DNA of 64,000 nt, from NCBI GenBank assembly GCA_002269645.1, contig NIVC01000460.1, forward strand, positions 62,001-126,000, in the 5' to 3' direction. Origin of the DNA: Macrostomum lignano (taxonomy: Eukaryota). The translations under genes and the position numbers were made by a program. How positions within the stretch are numbered: position 1 is the stretch's first letter; each line of letters starts with the position of its first letter. Of the stretch, positions 7,196-35,760 are shown in pieces. Under the pieces are notes generated by a model, which worked only from the letters and a program-made list of their open reading frames with translations, was not told the origin of the DNA and searched no databases.

Positions 7196-7257
7196 TACTA
7201 CTACTGCTATTACTACTACTACTACTACTACTACTATTACTACTACTACTACTACTA

Positions 7258-7308
<51 letters not shown>

Positions 7309-7325: not shown

Positions 7326-7734
7326 TTTAGAATTTCAGGAAATAAGTATATTCAGAAGGTGTTTATTGAAGTACTTGTAATGTAAAATTTTGTAATAAAA
7401 ATGTTCAAGTTGTCTATAAACAAATGCTACAAAGTTAAGACAACAATTTAAGGTACTTATGCTGCACAAGTTTATTTTTATCAGGTGCATAAACATAAAT
7501 ATAAGTCCAACTCAGTGTTAAGAGTAACAATTGCAATTGCAATCTTGCAAAGAATACTTTTTAAAGAGACAATAGAAACAGTGCATTACAGTTTTAAGAG
7601 AAAATGAGTTGAGAGTCGAGTGCGGTTCTTTGATAATACATTTTTTTACCGGTGCAACTTCGGGTTGGAGGGGGGAACTTGGTTCACTTTGAAAATAGAA
7701 ATAGGGCGCAATGTCATCTGCAAGCCTGGTTGCG

Positions 7735-29500: not shown

Positions 29501-30091
29501 AGAGTTATTCCTAAGCACCAGACGCCGTGTCTGATACAGGTGGTTGAGCAGGTGCAGACAGTAGCACAGGCGGATCCTGTCGGCACTCTCTGGCCCAGGC
29601 CGCCGGTCGCACAGTGTCAAATCTCTGTAGCCAGTGAGCAGCCTCAGCAAACTGCTCCATCTGTCACCCAGGCCAGCCGCCGCCTCAGCTGCTGGCCTGA
29701 GAAAGCTGACAAAATCAGCTGACAAACTGTCAGAGTCGGAGGCTAGTCGGGTTTTCAGTTCGTCAAGACACCGGGGCAGCTTGTAGAGATAGGCCTGCTC
29801 GCCGACAAAGCCGGGCAGTTCAAGGCTGGCTGAGAGGCACTGGCCATCGCGCAGAGTGCTGGTCTCCGAGTCGGTGAGCACAGCAGATAAGTGCCGGTGA
29901 AAACTGCTATTGGCAAAGGAACTCTTTGCCGTTGAAGAGGACCGACTGTCTACAGGACGAGATCGTTTCGCTTTTGAAGCAGAAGTTTCGCTGTCGGTTT
30001 CGCTGTCGGTGCTGCTTTCGTCTTTGAGAGCTTCGGCTGGTCGCTTCGGCGGCAGCTTTGCCAAGGAGTTCGGCTGGGCGGCGGTGGCCAT
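26568..30091 (-). CDS. UTP25: U3 snoRNA-associated protein 25 (DIEXF/Def), ~612 aa. Exons 30091-28971, 28743-28312, 26853-26568
   Basis: Family motifs RDQGFARPRVLLLLP, DDFRLGIAV, LYTPFLASDLIVASPLGL, LSSLELLIIDQAD, QNW, RQT, SEYT, LLYSERYHFY.R.R.RGI..L.FYGPP. Both junctions GT-AG in phase 2. Confidence 0.92.
26940..28250. repeat. Two intronic arrays: ~23-bp AGACTTTCAAATCTCACCCTAT (26940-27520) and ~20-bp palindromic CCCTGAGATTTGAAATCTCA (27820-28250)
   Basis: Direct reading within UTP25 intron 2. Confidence 0.85.
28805..28957. repeat. (GGTGA/GGTCA)n then (GTCA)n filling UTP25 intron 1
   Basis: Direct reading. Confidence 0.9.
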
Positions 30092-30299
30092 GAAATATGA
30101 AACATTATGTACTTTAGTAATGATAACTGTTGGGATTAGAAACTGGGAGGGGTGGAAAGAGTGGGAGAAAGGAAGGGAAGGGGGGAGGAGGGAATGGACA
30201 GAGGATGAGAGGAGGGGAAGAGGGGAGATGGAAGAGAAGAGGGGAAGGAAAGGGAAGAGGGGAAGAGGGGAAGAAGGAAAGGGAAGAGGGGAAGAGGGA

Positions 30300-30930
30300 C
30301 CCAGGAAGGTAATAAAGGAAGGGGAAGAGGGAAGGGGGAAGGTAATAAAGGAAGGGGAAGAGGGAAAGGAGGAAGGTAATAAAGGAAGGGGAAGAGGGAA
30401 GGGGGGAAGGTAATAAAGGAAGGGGAAGAGGGAAGGGGGGAAGGTAATAAAGGAAGGGGAAGAGGGAAGGGGGGAAGGTAATAAAGGAAGGGGAAGAGGG
30501 AAGGGGGGAAGGTAATAAAGGAAGGGGAAGAGGGAAGGGGGAAGGTAATAAAGGAAGGGGAAGAGGGAAGGGGGAAGGTAATAAAGGAAGGGGAAGAGGG
30601 AAGGGGGGAAGGTAATAAAGGAAGGGGAAGAGGGAAGGGGGAAGGTAATAAAGGAAGGGGAAGAGGGAAGGGGGAAGGTAATAAAGGAAGGGGAAGAGGG
30701 AAGGGGGGAAGGTAATAAAGGAAGGGGAAGAGGGAAGGGGGGAAGGTAATAAAGGAAGGGGAAGAGGGAAGGGGGGAAGGTAATAAAGGAAGGGGAAGAG
30801 GGAAGGGGGGAAGGTAATAAAGGAAGGGGAAGAGGGAAGGGGGAAGGTAATAAAGGAAGGGGAAGAGGGAAGGGAGGAAGGTAATAAAGGAAGGGGAAGA
30901 GGGAAGGGGGGAAGGTAATAAAGGAAGAGG
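30300..30930. repeat. 33-34-bp purine-rich minisatellite GAAGGTAATAAAGGAAGGGGAAGAGGGAAGGGG
   Basis: Direct reading, between TCEANC2 and UTP25. Confidence 0.95.
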
Positions 30931-31116
30931 AAATGTCCAGTTGAAAAATTGACACAAATCCAGACAGCATAATGAAAAAAATGAAAGCAAGCAAGTTCGT
31001 ATTAAATTGTATTATTTGTATTGTATTTCAATTTAAATGCACTGCAATAAACAGACGAATGATAAAAGTAACATTGGATTTCGGAGCGCAATATAATTAA
31101 AGCATTAGCAAACTTG

Positions 31117-31797
31117 TCAACCAGTCAGAGCAGCCAGAAGCCCCTTATAGTCGGCGTCAGCAGCAGTGGCAGCCGCCCGCAGGCTGGCATCCGACCTCAG
31201 TCTAGCCGTCACCCGCCTGGCCGCTTGCCAATAATTATGACCAACTAAGCTGCGGTAATTAAAGAACAGCTGTCGCTCAATGCCGACAGCGGCTGGCGAG
31301 TCCTCCGAGCAGCTCAACGCAGCAGCCAGCAGCTGTCGGGTCCGCCTTCGCTGCTCTGTACAGGCGGCGTCGCAGGCCACGTCCAGCTGCTGACGGCTCT
31401 GAACTTCGATAAAATGAGCCAGCCAGGAGTCGCAGATCGCGCTAGCCGCCCTGGCAACTTCAGCATCCGGATGGTTGGTCAATCGTTTCACGTGAGCGCC
31501 AATCTTGGTGAGTTTGAGCAGCTCCCTGCTAGGCTGCTTGGCTGCCAGCTTATTCAGAGTGTCCAGCAGCTGACCCGAGCTGCATCTCTCCGGAGCTCTC
31601 AGTACCTCCTTGTAGCGGTACAGGTCTTCCACCACGACAACGCCGCGCATGTCGGTGATGCGCACCTGCCGGCTGGAGCCCGAGGAGACGCCGAGGCCGC
31701 CGCCTGTGTCCGGCTGTCGCTTTAGAAAATTGTCGATTCGAATTTGACGCAGCCGGCCGTCGCCTTGCGGCCGTCTGGATGAAGCTCGGGGCGGAGA
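31117..31797 (-). CDS. TCEANC2: Transcription elongation factor A N-terminal and central domain-containing protein 2; main exon, start codon not in this exon
   Basis: RQVRITDMRGVVVVEDLYRYKEVL...PSRELLKLTKIGAHVKRLTNHPDAEVARAASAICDSW...IERQLF...Y..AARRVTARLR matches the TCEANC2 layout including the TFIIS N-terminal (LW) domain. Acceptor CCCCCAG at 31798-31804. Confidence 0.85.
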   Translation of the reverse strand, partial: SPPRASSRRPQGDGRLRQIRIDNFLKRQPDTGGGLGVSSGSSRQVRITDMRGVVVVEDLYRYKEVLRAPERCSSGQLLDTLNKLAAKQPSRELLKLTKIGAHVKRLTNHPDAEVARAASAICDSWLAHFIEVQSRQQLDVACDAACTEQRRRTRQLLAAALSCSEDSPAAVGIERQLFFNYRSLVGHNYWQAARRVTARLRSDASLRAAATAADADYKGLLAALTG

Positions 31798-32079
31798 CTG
31801 GGGGGATGTGGGAGTTTTGTTTATAGTAGCAATCGACAATTAAAAAATTTTCTAAGGACATCTATAAGACGATTGGGACCTATAAATGGATCTATAAGAC
31901 AGCCTACAGGATCTATAGAGATAGATAGATCCAAAGATCACTGTAGTATAACAGGACGTAAAACTCAAGGATCGTGTAATTTTTAGGGGGCCGATTTTCT
32001 GGAAATACACTGCAGTGATTTAGAATTAGAATTAGATTTAGACAATAGACAATAGACCTCAATAAGACAGTAGAAATCT

Positions 32080-34140
32080 ACAGAGATCTTTAAGACAGTA
32101 GAAATCTACAGAGATCTATAAAACAGCATAAATCTACAGATATCTATAAAACAGCATAAATCTACAGAGATCTATAAGACAGTAGAAATCTACAGAGATC
32201 TATAAGACAGTAGAAATCTACAGAGATCTATAAGACAGCATAAATCTACAGAGATCTATAAGACAGTAGAAACCTACAGAGATCTATAAGACAGCATAAA
32301 TCTACAGAGATCTATAAGACAGTAGAAACCTACAGAGATCTATAAGACAGCATAAACCTACAGAGATCTATAAGACAGTAGAAACCTACAGAGATCTATA
32401 AGACAGCATAAACCTACAGAGATCTATAAGACAGCATAAATCTACAGAGATCTATAAGACAGTAGAAATCTACAGAGATCTATAAAACAGCATAAATCTA
32501 CAGAGATCTATAAGACAGTTGAAATCTACAGAGGTCTATAAGACAGTAGAAATCTACAGAGATCTATAAAACAGCATAAATCTACAGAGATCTATAAGAC
32601 AGTAGAAATCTACAGAGATCTATAAGACAGTAGAAATCTGCAGAGATCTAGAAGACAGTAGAAATCTGCAGAGATCTATAAGACAGTAGAAATCTACAGA
32701 GATCTATAAGACAGTAGAAATCTACAGAGGTCTATAAGACAGTAGAAATCTACAGAGATCTATAAGACAGTAGAAATCTACAGGTCTATAAGACAGTAGA
32801 AATCTGCAGAGATCTATAAGACAGTAGAAACCTACAGAGATCTATAAGACAGCATAAACCTACAGAGATCTATAAGACAGTAGAAATCTACAGAGGTCTA
32901 TAAGACAGTAGAAATCTGCAGAGATCTATAAGACAGTAGAAATCTACAGAGATCTATAAGACAGTAGAAATCTACAGAGATCTATAAGACAGTAGAAATC
33001 TGCAGAGATCTATAAGACAGTAGAAATCTACAGAGATCTATAAAACAGCATAAATCTACACAGATCTATAAGACAGTAGAAATCTGCAGAGATCTATAAG
33101 ACAGTAGAAATCTACAGAGATCTATAAAACAGTATAAATCTACACAGATCTATAAGACAGTAGAAATCTACAGAGATCTATAAGACAGTAGAAATCTACA
33201 GAGATCTATAAGACAGTAGAAATCTGCAGAGATCTAGAAGACAGTAGAAATCTACAGAGATCTAGAAGACAGTAGAAATCTACAGAGATCTATAAGACAG
33301 TAGAAATCTGCAGAGATCTAGAAGACAGTAGAAATCTACAGAGATCTAGAAGACAGTAGAAATCTACAGAGGTCTATAAGACAGTAGAAATCTACAGAGG
33401 TCTATAAGACAGTAGAAATCTACAGAGATCTATAAGACAGTAGAAATCTGCAGAGATCTAGAAGACAGCATAAATCTACAGAGATCTATAAGACAGTAGA
33501 AATCTGCAGAGATCTAGAAGACAGCATAAATCTACAGAGATCTAGAACATAGTAGAAATCTACAGAGATCTATAAGACAGTAGAAATCTACAGAGATCTA
33601 GAAGAAAGCATAAATCTACAGAGATCTAGAAGACAGTAGAAATCTGCAGAGATCTAGAAGACAGTAGAAATCTACAGAGATCTATAAAACAGCATAAATC
33701 TACAGAGGTCTATAAGACAGTAGAAATCTACAGAGGTCTATAAGACAGTAGAAATCTACAGAGATCTATAAGACAGTAGAAATCTGCAGAGATCTAGAAG
33801 ACAGCATAAATCTACAGAGATCTATAAGACAGTAGAAATCTGCAGAGATCTAGAAGACAGCATAAATCTACAGAGATCTATAAGACAGTAGAAATCTGCA
33901 GAGATCTAGAAGACAGCATAAATCTACAGAGATCTAGAACATAGTAGAAATCTACAGAGATCTATAAGACAGTAGAAATCTACAGAGATCTAGAAGAAAG
34001 CATAAATCTACAGAGATCTAGAAGACAGTAGAAATCTACAGAGGTCTATAAGACAGTAGAAATCTAAAGAGGTCTATAAGGCAGTAGAAATCTACAGAGA
34101 TCTATAAGACAGCATAAATCTACAGAGATCTATAAGACAG
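32080..34140. repeat. 28-bp minisatellite CTATAAGACAGTAGAAATCTACAGAGAT, about 70 copies
   Basis: Direct reading. Confidence 0.95.
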
Positions 34141-35129
34141 CCTTCATTCCTAGAGAGCTTTACTGGCAGTCAGAATCGTCAAAGATAGCATTAAGCAAAC
34201 AGGTCTGACCCATTTAGCTTAGCACAGTGAAGCCAGACGTGGCAGAAAAGCTATTTCCAGCATAAATACAAATTTAGCATCACCGAAGACTTATCTCAAA
34301 TTTGAGAAATTTCGCCTAGAATCCCTCTCACCCCCACCCATCTCAAATGGCGAATATATAGCTAGCAAAAGGTCTAAAGTACTTCTGAATAGAAACTCGG
34401 CTATAAAGCAAACAGGCAGAGAGCCCCGGGCCTGTCACACACAGAAACAGCTCGAGCGGATTAACGATAGGCCGACCCTTCCAGAGAGCGGCTGAGCGTG
34501 AGGCGGTGTACGATGGCGCGCACACAACAGCCATGGCATAAACGAAATGAGTCTGGATAGGGGGATCAGGGATCAGGGAGAAACGAGAGCGACCCTGTTG
34601 TAGCAATTCGCAACTAATAAAAAAATATGCTCAGCCATCGCCATTGAAGCCATCTCTATAGTGTAGCATGCGCTGAGCATTGCAGCTCTTATTATCTCAA
34701 ATAGCAACATTTCACAAGCCTGAGTTAGAAACAAAAATAATTAAGATAGATCTTTACAAATAAATGGTTTAACAGTAAGATAGAAGCGAAGTCATTTCTC
34801 AATTTATTTACTTAATTATTTATAAGAAGTAACAAGAGTGACTATGCCAATTAGGTGTTCTAAAAAAGATTACTGAAAACAATATTACCTGTAATAATCG
34901 CATTGACATTATTATTAACTACAGTATTAAATTATTTTGAAACTTTCAGAAACATTTACGTAATTTCGTAGAACGTGAATTCATTTAAAAATTGCCTGAC
35001 AGGATTTCCCCTCCCCCGAAAATTTCCTACAAAATGGAATTCCCAAACGTCGGTAACTGCCACTGATTCACCTTGACGGGAATTCCCCAGGATAGCCCGG
35101 TATGGGAATCCCCACAATTTCTACGACGG

Positions 35130-35760
35130 GAATTCCCAATAATTTTTCATAACGGGAATTCCTCAGATTTTCCATGACAAGAATTCCCCAGGATTTCCGA
35201 GTACGGGAATTCCCTAGGGGTTTCCCACGACGGTATTTTTCCAGGGTTTTCCAGTACGGAATTCCTCAGGATTTCCCACAATTTCCCACGAAGGGAATTC
35301 CTCAGGATTTCCCACGAAAGGAATTCCTCAGGATTTCTCACGAAAGGAATTCCTCAGGATTTTGATCGAAGGGGATTCCTCAGGATTTCTCACGAAAGGA
35401 ATTCCTCAGGATTTTGATCGAAGGGGATTCCTCAGGATTTTGATCGAAGGGGATTCCTCAGGATTTCCCACGATTTCCCACGAAGGGAATTCCTCAGGAT
35501 TTCTCACGAAAGGAATTCCTCAGGATATCTCACGAAAGGAATTCCTCAGGATTTCGATCGAAGGGGATTCCTCAGGATTTCGATCGAAGGGGATTCCTCA
35601 GGATTTCCCACGAAGGGGATTCCTCAGGATTCCCCAAAAAGGGAATTCCTAGGATTTCCATCGAAGGGAATTCCTCAGGATCTCCCACGAAGGGAATTTC
35701 TCGGGATTTCCCACGAATTGAATTCCTCAGCATTTCCTACGAAAGGATTTCCCCAGATAT
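35130..35760. repeat. ~26-bp minisatellite GGAATTCCTCAGGATTTCCCACGAAA
   Basis: Direct reading; downstream of the acyl-CoA oxidase stop. Confidence 0.9.

What the first reader, a model, noticed from the sequence alone, without database searches (positions are those of the whole stretch)
31770..31840. TCEANC2 has no ATG of its own, and the acceptor is in exactly the phase needed for a spliced-leader-supplied AUG
Seen: the frame is open from the acceptor (ACATCCCCCAG|TCT CCG CCC...) with no ATG until DMRG, well inside the conserved region. The residue that corresponds to the homologs' initiating MDKF reads ATC-GAC-AAT-TTT (IDNF). The acceptor is phase 0. Established: flatworm spliced leaders end in AUG, which can act as the initiator codon. 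Inference: SL-AUG + TCTCCG... gives a full-length MSPPRASS... protein, so translation would depend on trans-splicing. Alternative: a weak cis exon at 34539-34477 (ATG CCA TGG...GGA AGG|GTCGGC) is also phase 0.
Basis: partly seen in the sequence, partly recalled or inferred. Interest (0 to 1): 0.7.

Follow-up and report, generated by a model that had tools for sequence, protein, structure and literature searches.

The report
Flatworm gene borrowing its start codon
The TCEANC2 gene of the flatworm Macrostomum lignano has lost the start codon that its relatives have, and most likely gets one from the AUG at the end of the spliced leader RNA added to its mRNA; this mechanism is already documented in other flatworms, so this is one more example.

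Summary
The window is Macrostomum lignano scaffold NIVC01000460.1. On the minus strand, a single-exon TCEANC2 orthologue runs from a canonical acceptor (CCCCCCAG|TCT, first exon base 31797) to a TGA at 31119-31117.

- No ATG occurs in any frame between 31797 and 31650 (codon 50).
- An in-frame TAA at 31842-31840 closes the frame upstream.
- Codon 21 (ATC, 31737) sits where homologues have the M of their conserved MDKF start.
- 111 of 152 homologue alignments extend upstream of codon 50, so codon 50 is not the ancestral start.
- The published M. lignano spliced leader ends in ATG. Joined at 31797 it reads ATG|TCT CCG..., in frame, giving MSPPRASS...
- Two independent database gene models of sister copies begin exactly at this AG and are 5'-partial.
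- The proposed cis exon (34539-34477) is real sequence but unremarkable: it is one of 38 chance ATG...|GT phase-0 candidates and has a poor donor.

I found no read showing the SL junction, so trans-splicing at this site remains inferred. SL-AUG initiation is established in Schistosoma and Echinococcus and has been noted for Macrostomum. This is a new member of a known kind, of modest interest.

The parts
31798..31812 (-). 3' splice acceptor: C-rich polypyrimidine tract plus AG (CCCACATCCCCCCAG). Proposed site of SL addition; AG at 31799-31798.
   Evidence: sequence. Identical in homeologues except for a 1-nt deletion in the C-run in L002. The published M. lignano trans-acceptor motif is [T/C]TNCAG (PMC8629364); this site has CCCCAG, a near match.
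31840..31842 (-). In-frame TAA, 15 codons upstream of the acceptor. It closes the frame, so no genomic start is possible further upstream without splicing.
31117..31797 (-). Single coding exon of the TCEANC2 orthologue: 226 codons from the acceptor plus TGA at 31119-31117. With the SL AUG it gives a 227-aa protein, MSPPRASS...LTG.
   Evidence: It is 98% identical to PAA74661.1 and PAA53293.1, and the window's own model P0003 starts at 31779. Homeologue pN/pS is 0.24.
31738..31797 (-). Codons 1-20 (SPPRASSRRPQGDGRLRQIR): an Arg-rich N-terminal extension with no counterpart in homologues. It is translated only if initiation is at the SL AUG.
   Evidence: Homologues start at MDKF. No ATG occurs here in any frame. 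There is no codon-usage signal here.
31711..31737 (-). IDNFLKRQP, the counterpart of the family's N-terminal MDKFV(I/V)(K/R)xP. ATC (31737-31735) occupies the position of the ancestral initiator ATG.
   Evidence: phmmer offsets: D22 aligns with D2 in 11 homologues. The PSSM's best hit in the protein is here, p about 0.01.
31648..31650 (-). First genomic ATG, in frame at codon 50 (context GACATGC). It lies inside the conserved KQATIESLKGVVVVED-type block (here RQVRITDMRGVVVVED). It is a possible secondary start by leaky scanning.
   Evidence: 111 of 152 homologue alignments begin upstream of it.
31423..31560 (-). TFIIS N-terminal helical-bundle domain (Pfam Med26, PF08711), residues 80-125.
   Evidence: E = 1.6e-8, 34.6 bits against a cut-off of 20.6.
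34477..34539 (-). Judged to be a chance ORF, not part of the gene.
   Evidence: It is one of 38 ATG...|GT phase-0 candidates in the 4,073 nt upstream. Its donor matches the consensus at 5 of 9 positions and has C at +3, against the species consensus GT[G/A]AG. Homeologues differ here by a non-synonymous CCG to TTG change.
32062..34140 (.). A 28-nt tandem array (74 copies) filling most of the upstream spacer (the presumed outron or intercistronic region).

Best explanation
This is the M. lignano orthologue of TCEANC2, encoded by one exon whose 5' end is a splice acceptor at 31798/31797.

The pre-mRNA may start in the repeat-rich spacer, or may be a polycistronic ACOX-TCEANC2-UTP25 transcript. 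I propose it is trans-spliced to the 35-nt spliced leader. The last three bases of the leader are AUG and they abut TCT at 31797 in phase 0. The mature mRNA then has a 32-nt leader followed by AUG UCU CCG CCC..., and encodes a 227-aa protein, MSPPRASSRRPQGDGRLRQIR-IDNFLKRQP....

The ancestral initiator (the M of the family's MDKF start) has mutated to ATC (Ile21). The conserved N-terminus can therefore only be made from the SL AUG. Because the SL AUG has U at -3 and U at +4, some ribosomes probably scan past it and start at the next AUG, the in-frame codon 50. That would give a shorter protein lacking the MDKF and KQATI blocks but keeping the TFIIS N-domain.

Shown: gene identity, acceptor sequence and phase, absence of any other ATG, the position of the lost start, the SL sequence (from the literature), and gene models that start at the AG.

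Inferred: SL addition at this site and use of the SL AUG.
For: - The organism and locus are M. lignano Mlig_3_7; L003 is 100% identical to window 37779-25117.
- The SL ends in ATG, and 30-39% of M. lignano genes are SL trans-spliced, with enrichment among conserved genes (PMC8629364; PMC5730564).
- The acceptor is canonical, the phase is 0, and no ATG occurs in any frame for 147 nt after it.
- The TCEANC2 assignment rests on 155 HMMER hits, the best of them 205-216 aa and named TCEANC2 by NCBI, plus the Pfam Med26 domain.
- I21 sits at the homologues' M1, and 111 of 152 alignments extend upstream of M50.
- PAA53293.1 (L002) and UniProt A0A1I8JCQ3 begin at SPPRASS, exactly after the AG. PAA74661.1 begins one codon later. 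All are 5'-partial, single-range CDSs with no upstream exon.
- The annotation pipeline cuts transcripts at peaks of SL-trimmed reads and then calls ORFs on SL-less transcripts. That explains the 'partial' flags (PMC5730564).
- L002 has a 1-nt deletion in the C-run just 5' of the AG. This would break the frame if the region were read through, and it is harmless if this is a splice boundary.
- Homeologue differences in codons 1-49 are 2 synonymous and 0 non-synonymous; for the whole gene pN/pS is 0.24.
- Same-strand neighbours lie at short repeat-adjusted spacing. The gap from TCEANC2 to the candidate UTP25 acceptor is about 970 nt, of which 688 nt is tandem repeat. This fits the operon criterion of PMC8629364.
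- SL-AUG initiation is established. In S. mansoni the SL AUG is in frame in 28% of trans-spliced mRNAs and more than 40 cDNAs need it (Cheng 2006, via PMC9851317). It is also reported in E. granulosus (PMC3510090), and the SL ATG is called a translation start codon in Macrostomum (PMC10468722).
Against: - No SL-exon junction read or cDNA was seen. The junction 24-mer is absent from the one collection I could scan, and the gene is not listed in any held supplement.
- The model annotated in this very window (P0003) starts at 31779, 18 nt inside the exon, not at the AG.
- Annotated 5' ends in this assembly are not always acceptors. The UTP25 models start right after their ATG/CTG, next to a 9-mer resembling the SL tail.
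- The acceptor is CCCCAG rather than the commonest [T/C]TNCAG.
- An open 49-codon frame is not unusual: 32% of shuffles stay open. A crude codon-usage score does not favour frame 0 in codons 1-49.
- The match of the N-terminal motif is weak, 4 bits against a homologue median of 25.
- The SL AUG context is poor by vertebrate rules.
Confidence: 0.7

Rival explanations
1. Translation starts only at the genomic ATG of codon 50 (31650). The 147 nt before it are a 5' UTR that still carries the relic of the old N-terminus. The mRNA may be unspliced, cis-spliced to a non-coding leader exon, or trans-spliced with the SL AUG skipped.
For: - It is the only genomic in-frame ATG near the 5' end, and its context (G at -3) is better than that of the SL AUG.
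- The TFIIS N-domain (residues 80-125) would be intact.
- The open frame is not statistically unusual and shows no codon-usage signal.
- The MDKF relic is weak.
- The window's own model starts at 31779, not at an AG.
Against: - 111 of 152 homologue alignments extend upstream of residue 50, and M50 sits inside the family's most conserved block...KQATIESLKGVVVVED.
- The differences in codons 1-49 between homeologues are both synonymous.
- If the mRNA is trans-spliced, the SL AUG is the first AUG and is in frame, so at least part of initiation should occur there.
Confidence: 0.15
2. An upstream ATG-bearing exon (34539-34477 or another) is cis-spliced to the acceptor at 31797 and supplies the start codon.
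For: The candidate exon exists, is phase 0, and is retained in the homeologues (97.5% identity over 241 nt).
Against: - It is one of 38 such ATG...|GT candidates in 4,073 nt.
- Its donor, AGG|GTCGGC, has C at +3, against the species consensus GT[G/A]AG.
- Homeologues differ within it by a two-base, non-synonymous change.
- A 2.1-kb tandem array would lie in the intron.
- The database CDSs are single-range and start at the acceptor, with no upstream exon.
- Homologues have nothing conserved upstream of MDKF.
Confidence: 0.07
3. Initiation is at a near-cognate codon in the genomic sequence: CTG at codon 16 (31752), ATT at codon 19, ATC at codon 21, or TTG at 31839 in an unspliced transcript.
For: These codons are in frame. 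Non-AUG starts are known in eukaryotes.
Against: - The contexts are poor (CGGCTGC, with C at -3).
- The TTG at 31839 lies upstream of the acceptor, and its frame is broken in L002 by the 1-nt deletion.
- This reading is unnecessary if the SL supplies an AUG.
Confidence: 0.04
4. The locus is a decaying, non-functional copy whose start codon loss is simply a disabling mutation.
For: The gene is intronless, has lost its ATG, and M. lignano is a recent polyploid with redundant copies (PMC10468722).
Against: - All three sequenced copies keep the full 226-codon frame and share the ATC.
- pN/pS is 0.24, and there are no indels in the CDS although indels occur in the flanks.
- No ATG-bearing copy was found in the protein collections.
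Confidence: 0.04

Closest known systems
Schistosoma mansoni / S. japonicum mRNAs that use the SL 3'-terminal AUG as initiator methionine (Cheng, Cohen, Ndegwa & Davis 2006, J Biol Chem 281:733; read only second-hand through PMC9851317, PMC3510090, PMC12582326)
   Same: A flatworm SL ending in ...UUGCAUG. The SL AUG is in frame with the main ORF, and no genomic AUG lies upstream of the phylogenetically conserved N-terminus. The AUG has been shown able to initiate translation in vivo.
   Different: The species is a free-living macrostomorph and the gene is different. Here the trans-spliced cDNA has not been seen and translation has not been tested. TCEANC2 does not appear in the lists I could search.
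Echinococcus granulosus SL-bearing cDNAs needing the SL ATG (Parkinson et al. 2012, PMC3510090)
   Same: The argument is the same: the SL AUG is required if the N-terminus is to match conserved orthologues. That study found 4 of 8 highlighted cDNAs of this kind, and conservation of SL-AUG use across Neodermata.
   Different: Those cases rest on sequenced SL-cDNAs. This one rests on genome sequence plus gene-model boundaries.
slORFs: ORFs created by SL addition in nematodes, Oikopleura and trypanosomes (slORFfinder, PMC9851317)
   Same: The start codon is supplied by the leader rather than by the gene.
   Different: Those mostly use near-cognate NUG codons inside the SL and often create new or alternative ORFs. 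Here a true AUG at the SL 3' end would restore the canonical ORF of a conserved protein. No flatworm ribosome-profiling data were available to that study.
TCEANC2 of other animals (e.g. XP_014666864.1, XP_045595469.1)
   Same: Length of about 205-216 aa, collinear alignment, the TFIIS N-terminal helical bundle, the VVVVED block and the D-x-F-[VIL]-x-[KR]-x-P N-terminal motif.
   Different: Those proteins start with their own ATG at MDKF. The M. lignano protein has Ile there and 20 extra codons up to a splice acceptor. Identity is 28-39%.
Macrostomum genome annotation practice (Wiberg et al. 2023, PMC10468722; Wudarski et al. 2017, PMC5730564)
   Same: These papers recognise that the Macrostomum SL carries a terminal ATG 'translation start codon', and that trimming it affects ORF annotation.
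   Different: They give no gene-level catalogue of SL-AUG-dependent genes. In Mlig_3_7 such genes simply appear as 5'-partial CDSs.

Membership tests
TCEANC2 (transcription elongation factor A N-terminal and central domain-containing protein 2) | TFIIS N-terminal helical-bundle domain (Pfam PF08711, Med26) | tested here: met
   residues 80-125, E = 1.6e-8, 34.6 bits (cut-off 20.6).
TCEANC2 (transcription elongation factor A N-terminal and central domain-containing protein 2) | Full-length collinear similarity to proteins named TCEANC2, with similar size (about 205-216 aa) | tested here: met
   155 hits, 56 of them at E <= 1e-10, with the best covering query residues 22-205/215. NCBI names XP_014666864.1, XP_074661676.1, XP_077005681.1 and XP_045595469.1 as TCEANC2 or TCEANC2-like.
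TCEANC2 (transcription elongation factor A N-terminal and central domain-containing protein 2) | N-terminus M-[DE]-[KRA]-[FY]-[VIL]-[VI]-[KR] at residue 1 | tested here: not met
   The motif is recognisable as IDNFLKR at residues 21-27, but the M is Ile and the motif is internal to the open frame. This is the point of the finding. It does not argue against orthology.
Flatworm mRNAs initiated at the spliced-leader AUG (Cheng et al. 2006 class) | The species' SL ends in AUG | tested here: met
   Literature only: the 35-nt SL ...TTATTGCATG (PMC8629364; PMC10468722). No SL RNA gene lies in the window.
Flatworm mRNAs initiated at the spliced-leader AUG (Cheng et al. 2006 class) | The mRNA is SL trans-spliced at the acceptor in question | not testable with these tools
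   Indirect evidence only: a canonical AG with a pyrimidine tract, and two gene models that start exactly at it with no upstream exon. No reads or cDNAs were reachable.
Flatworm mRNAs initiated at the spliced-leader AUG (Cheng et al. 2006 class) | The SL AUG is in frame with the main ORF, with no intervening stop | tested here: met
   ATG|TCT CCG..., 226 open codons to the TGA.
Flatworm mRNAs initiated at the spliced-leader AUG (Cheng et al. 2006 class) | No genomic AUG is able to encode the conserved N-terminus | tested here: met
   no ATG in any frame from 31797 to 31651; conservation extends upstream of M50.
Flatworm mRNAs initiated at the spliced-leader AUG (Cheng et al. 2006 class) | Translation actually begins at the SL AUG | not testable with these tools
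   This needs ribosome profiling, N-terminal proteomics or a reporter assay.
M. lignano operon (Ustyantsev & Berezikov 2021 criterion) | Adjacent same-strand genes, the downstream one trans-spliced, with a repeat-adjusted distance under 1 kb | tested here: inconclusive
   TCEANC2 stop (31117) to the candidate UTP25 acceptor (30143) is about 970 nt, minus a 688-nt tandem array, leaving about 285 nt: met on distance. ACOX stop (about 35873) to 31797 is 4,076 nt, minus about 2,760 nt of arrays, leaving about 1.3 kb including the ACOX 3' UTR: borderline. The trans-splicing status of the genes was not seen directly.

The most novel reading that the evidence does not exclude
M. lignano shows start-codon loss under cover of an in-frame SL AUG as an ongoing process.

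TCEANC2 has fixed the loss: ATG became ATC in all three sequenced copies, so the full-length protein is now obligately dependent on trans-splicing.

The adjacent gene UTP25 appears to be caught mid-transition. Two homeologues (this window and L002) keep their ATG. The third (L001) has CTG and no in-frame ATG in its whole first exon. All three share an in-phase candidate acceptor 17 codons upstream.

If confirmed genome-wide, the many 5'-partial CDSs of Mlig_3_7 would be a catalogue of SL-AUG-dependent genes. The polyploid homeologues would give a natural time series for this ratchet.
Probability: 0.3. Interest if true: 0.45.

Novelty: new member of a known kind. Interest (0 to 1): 0.27.

Why it matters
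If correct, the deposited M. lignano TCEANC2 models (PAA53293.1, PAA74661.1 and the model in this window) are not truncated. They are complete once the SL AUG is added.

The same is probably true of many other 5'-partial CDSs in this model organism, and this can be fixed simply by prepending the SL ATG before ORF calling.

Biologically, it is a clean case in which trans-splicing has become necessary to make a conserved N-terminus. That bears on the debate over what SL trans-splicing is for in monocistronic or conserved genes, and on how dependence on it evolves.

It does not reveal a new mechanism.

Tried and rejected
- **SL RNA gene or SL copy in the window.** None at up to 3 mismatches. Rfam found nothing in the window.
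- **Direct transcript evidence.** Exact look-up of the codon-50-started protein found nothing on record. The protein clusters hold only three GenBank models and one UniProt model, with no RNA-seq-derived member. The junction 24-mer TTATTGCATGTCTCCGCCCCGAGC is absent from JGI metagenome contigs.
- **Held supplements.** I searched those of PMC8629364, PMC5816591, PMC5730564, PMC12582326 and PMC5832876 for Mlig015510 and TCEANC2 and found no occurrence.
- **Primary papers.** Cheng et al. 2006 and Wasik et al. 2015 are not held.
- **HMM of homologue N-termini against codons 1-49.** The real sequence outscored all 2,000 shuffles (9.7 bits against a maximum of 9.0), but the reported alignment was to the low-complexity and KQATI part, not to MDKF. 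I replaced this with an ungapped PSSM.
- **Codon-usage log-odds and GC by codon position for codons 1-49.** Uninformative, or slightly against frame 0.
- **SL relic upstream of the UTP25 ATG.** Only an 8/9 match (TATTTCATG), not significant: 667 of 2,000 shuffles did as well.
- **Protein search for the M. lignano UTP25 models.** It returned nothing, probably because low-complexity words swamped the candidate list.
- **Bacterial promoter/terminator scan.** Run once; irrelevant to a eukaryote.
Full report
**What the window is.** The stretch 37779-25117 of the window is 100% identical, on the minus strand, to Macrostomum lignano scaffold NIVC01000460.1 of assembly Mlig_3_7 (GCA_002269645.1). Three same-strand genes lie here: an acyl-CoA oxidase (CDS end about 35873), the gene in question, and UTP25. 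Two sister copies (homeologues or alleles) were fetched as L001 (NIVC01000930.1) and L002 (NIVC01003105.1).

**The observation.** All coordinates below are on the minus strand.
- The sequence reads ...CCCACATCCCCCCAG|TCT CCG CCC CGA GCT TCA TCC AGA CGG..., with AG at 31799-31798 and the first exon base at 31797.
- The frame is closed upstream by TAA at 31842-31840. It runs open for 226 codons from 31797 to TGA at 31119-31117.
- Between 31797 and 31651 there is no ATG in any of the three frames. The first ATG is at 31650-31648, codon 50, in frame.
- Codons 21-24 are ATC GAC AAT TTT (IDNF).
The only slip is the C-run, which has six Cs here and five in L002.

**Identity of the gene.**
- Pfam finds the TFIIS N-terminal helical bundle (PF08711) at residues 80-125.
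- An exhaustive HMMER search gives 155 relatives, 56 of them at E <= 1e-10. The best are 205-216 aa and collinear. Those that carry names are called TCEANC2 by NCBI.
- 47 full-length relatives begin M-[DE]-[KRAS]-[FY], and most of them read MDKFV(I/V)(K/R).
- In local phmmer alignments, 11 relatives pair their D2 with D22 of the flatworm protein. In P0153 the M of MDKF pairs with I21. 111 of 152 alignments begin upstream of residue 50.
- An ungapped matrix of homologue residues 2-10 has its best match in the whole 226-aa protein at residue 22 (DNFLKRQPD). Only 200 of 20,000 shuffles of the N-terminal 49 residues score as well. The distance to the VVVVED block is 31 residues, against 32-35 in relatives.

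So Ile21 (ATC, 31737) occupies the position of the ancestral initiator. Codon 50 lies inside the family's most conserved block (RQVRITD-M-RGVVVVED against KQATIES-L-KGVVVVED), so it is not the ancestral start.

**The spliced leader.**
- The published M. lignano SL is a single 35-nt sequence, CGGTCTCTTACTGCGAAGACTCAATTTATTGCATG, found on 30-39% of genes and preferentially on conserved ones (PMC8629364; PMC5730564).
- It ends in ATG. Joined to 31797 it reads ...TTGC ATG|TCT CCG CCC, in phase 0. This gives MSPPRASSRRPQGDGRLRQIR followed by the IDNF... body.
- No SL gene or copy is in the window.

**Is the site really trans-spliced?** I could not reach any read or cDNA, and supplements do not list the gene. 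The evidence is indirect:
1. The site is a canonical AG behind a C-rich pyrimidine tract. It is close to, but not identical with, the commonest trans-acceptor motif [T/C]TNCAG.
2. GenBank PAA53293.1 (L002) and UniProt A0A1I8JCQ3 (from an earlier assembly) both begin at SPPRASS, the first codon after the AG. PAA74661.1 (L001) begins one codon later. All are 5'-partial, and the GenBank CDSs are single ranges with no upstream exon. The Mlig_3_7 pipeline cut transcripts at peaks of SL-trimmed reads and then ran TransDecoder on the SL-less transcripts. That procedure would turn an SL-AUG-initiated gene into a 'partial' CDS beginning at the acceptor.
3. L002 has a 1-nt deletion in the C-run immediately 5' of the AG. 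This is harmless at a splice boundary, but it would break the frame if the region were read through.
4. The gene sits in a same-strand cluster whose spacers are mostly tandem repeats. After subtracting the 688-nt array, the distance from TCEANC2 to the candidate UTP25 acceptor is about 285 nt. That is within the repeat-adjusted operon criterion of PMC8629364.

Two cautions apply:
- The model deposited for this very window (P0003) starts at 31779, 18 nt inside the exon.
- The UTP25 models start directly after their ATG/CTG rather than at an AG, next to a 9-mer (TATTTCATG) that resembles the SL tail. Annotated 5' ends in this assembly are therefore not infallible markers of acceptors. The sequence before 31797 (CCCCCCAG) does not resemble the SL tail, so that particular artefact does not apply here.

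**Is the gene alive?** All three copies keep the 226-codon frame and all have ATC at codon 21. The window copy differs from L001/L002 by 6 synonymous and 4 non-synonymous changes (pN/pS 0.24). Both changes in codons 1-49 are synonymous. The 230 nt of outron differ at 15 positions. The numbers are small but point to a functional gene whose first 49 codons are not decaying.

**The cis-exon alternative.** The exon 34539-34477 exists as described.
- An enumeration of the 4,073 nt between the ACOX stop and the acceptor finds 38 ATG-started, stop-free segments ending in phase 0 at a GT.
- This one scores 5 of 9 against the donor consensus, and two others score 6.
- It has C at intron position +3, where the species consensus is GT[G/A]AG.
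- The homeologues differ in it by a two-base, non-synonymous change.
- A 2.1-kb 28-nt tandem array would lie in the intron.
- Nothing upstream of MDKF is conserved in relatives.

I reject it as the likely start, though only spliced reads can exclude it.

**Other alternatives.**
- **Start at codon 50 only.** This is possible, especially as a second product by leaky scanning, because the SL AUG has U at -3 and +4 while codon 50 has G at -3. It would remove conserved sequence.
- **Near-cognate starts** (CTG at codon 16, ATT at 19, ATC at 21) have poor contexts.
- **A dead gene** is unlikely given the frame conservation across copies.

**Weak or negative results.** An open 49-codon frame occurs in 32% of shuffles. 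A crude codon-usage score does not favour frame 0 there, as expected if codons 1-20 were recruited from a former 5' UTR. The case rests on homology and position, not on coding statistics.

**Comparison with what is known.**
- All reported flatworm SLs end in AUG (PMC12582326).
- Cheng et al. 2006 showed that this AUG can initiate translation. In S. mansoni it is in frame in 28% of trans-spliced mRNAs, and more than 40 cDNAs need it (as summarised in PMC9851317).
- E. granulosus shows the same, with conservation of SL-AUG use across Neodermata (PMC3510090).
- Wiberg et al. 2023 explicitly call the terminal ATG of the Macrostomum SL a translation start codon (PMC10468722).

The present case works like these and very probably belongs with them. 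Two defining features, the SL junction and actual initiation at the SL AUG, could not be tested here.

**Verdict.** Novelty is a new member of a known kind, and interest is modest. The most useful consequence is practical: the 5'-partial M. lignano CDSs that begin at trans-splice acceptors in phase 0 should be read as complete proteins starting with the SL methionine.

Noticed in passing
window 30089-30144 (minus strand); L001 about 7600-7660; L002 about 7230-7290: UTP25, the next gene downstream, has its own ATG at 30091-30089. A candidate acceptor CCTCCCAG| (AG at 30144-30143) lies exactly 17 stop-free codons upstream in phase 0, so an SL AUG there would also be in frame. In homeologue L001 the ATG is CTG, and the first exon holds no in-frame ATG at all. 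That copy would need the SL AUG, which would make it a possible second case caught in transition.
   Followed up: partly
window 30085-30100; L002 7286; L001 7656: The database CDS starts for UTP25 lie immediately after the ATG/CTG (6 nt after it in this window), not at an AG. The preceding 9-mer TATTTCATG matches the SL tail TATTGCATG at 8 of 9 positions. This may be an SL-trimming artefact in the Mlig_3_7 annotation, and it is a warning about reading annotated 5' ends as acceptors.
   Followed up: partly
window 32062-34140: A 28-nt tandem array (74 copies, 91% matches; unit ATAAGACAGTAGAAATCTACAGAGATCT on the + strand) fills the spacer upstream of TCEANC2. It is also present, with a different copy number, in L001 and L002.
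   Followed up: no
window 30245-30932: A 34-nt tandem array (20 copies), CT-rich on the sense strand, lies between TCEANC2 and UTP25. It is stop-free in two frames, so it creates spurious ORFs of 284 and 682 aa in a mechanical ORF list.
   Followed up: no
window 35075-35756: A 26-nt (also 52- and 78-nt) tandem array (GGAATTCCTCAGGATTTCCCACGAAG) lies just downstream of the ACOX stop.
   Followed up: no
window 34400-34640: A non-repetitive block between the two arrays is 97.5% identical to both homeologues, while neighbouring spacer segments are about 89-93.5% identical. It could be a promoter or TSS region, or part of the ACOX 3' UTR.
   Followed up: no
P0004 (UniProt A0A1I8JCQ3, M. lignano): This 526-aa model joins the first 63 residues or so of TCEANC2 (starting SPPRASS) to frame-shifted UTP25 sequence, and is named 'PCIF1_WW domain-containing protein'. 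It is a chimeric model from an older assembly and is consistent with read-through or polycistronic transcripts across the two genes.
   Followed up: no
L002 about 5990 (equivalent to window about 31801-31806): A 1-nt deletion in the C-run directly upstream of the acceptor AG in one homeologue.
   Followed up: yes
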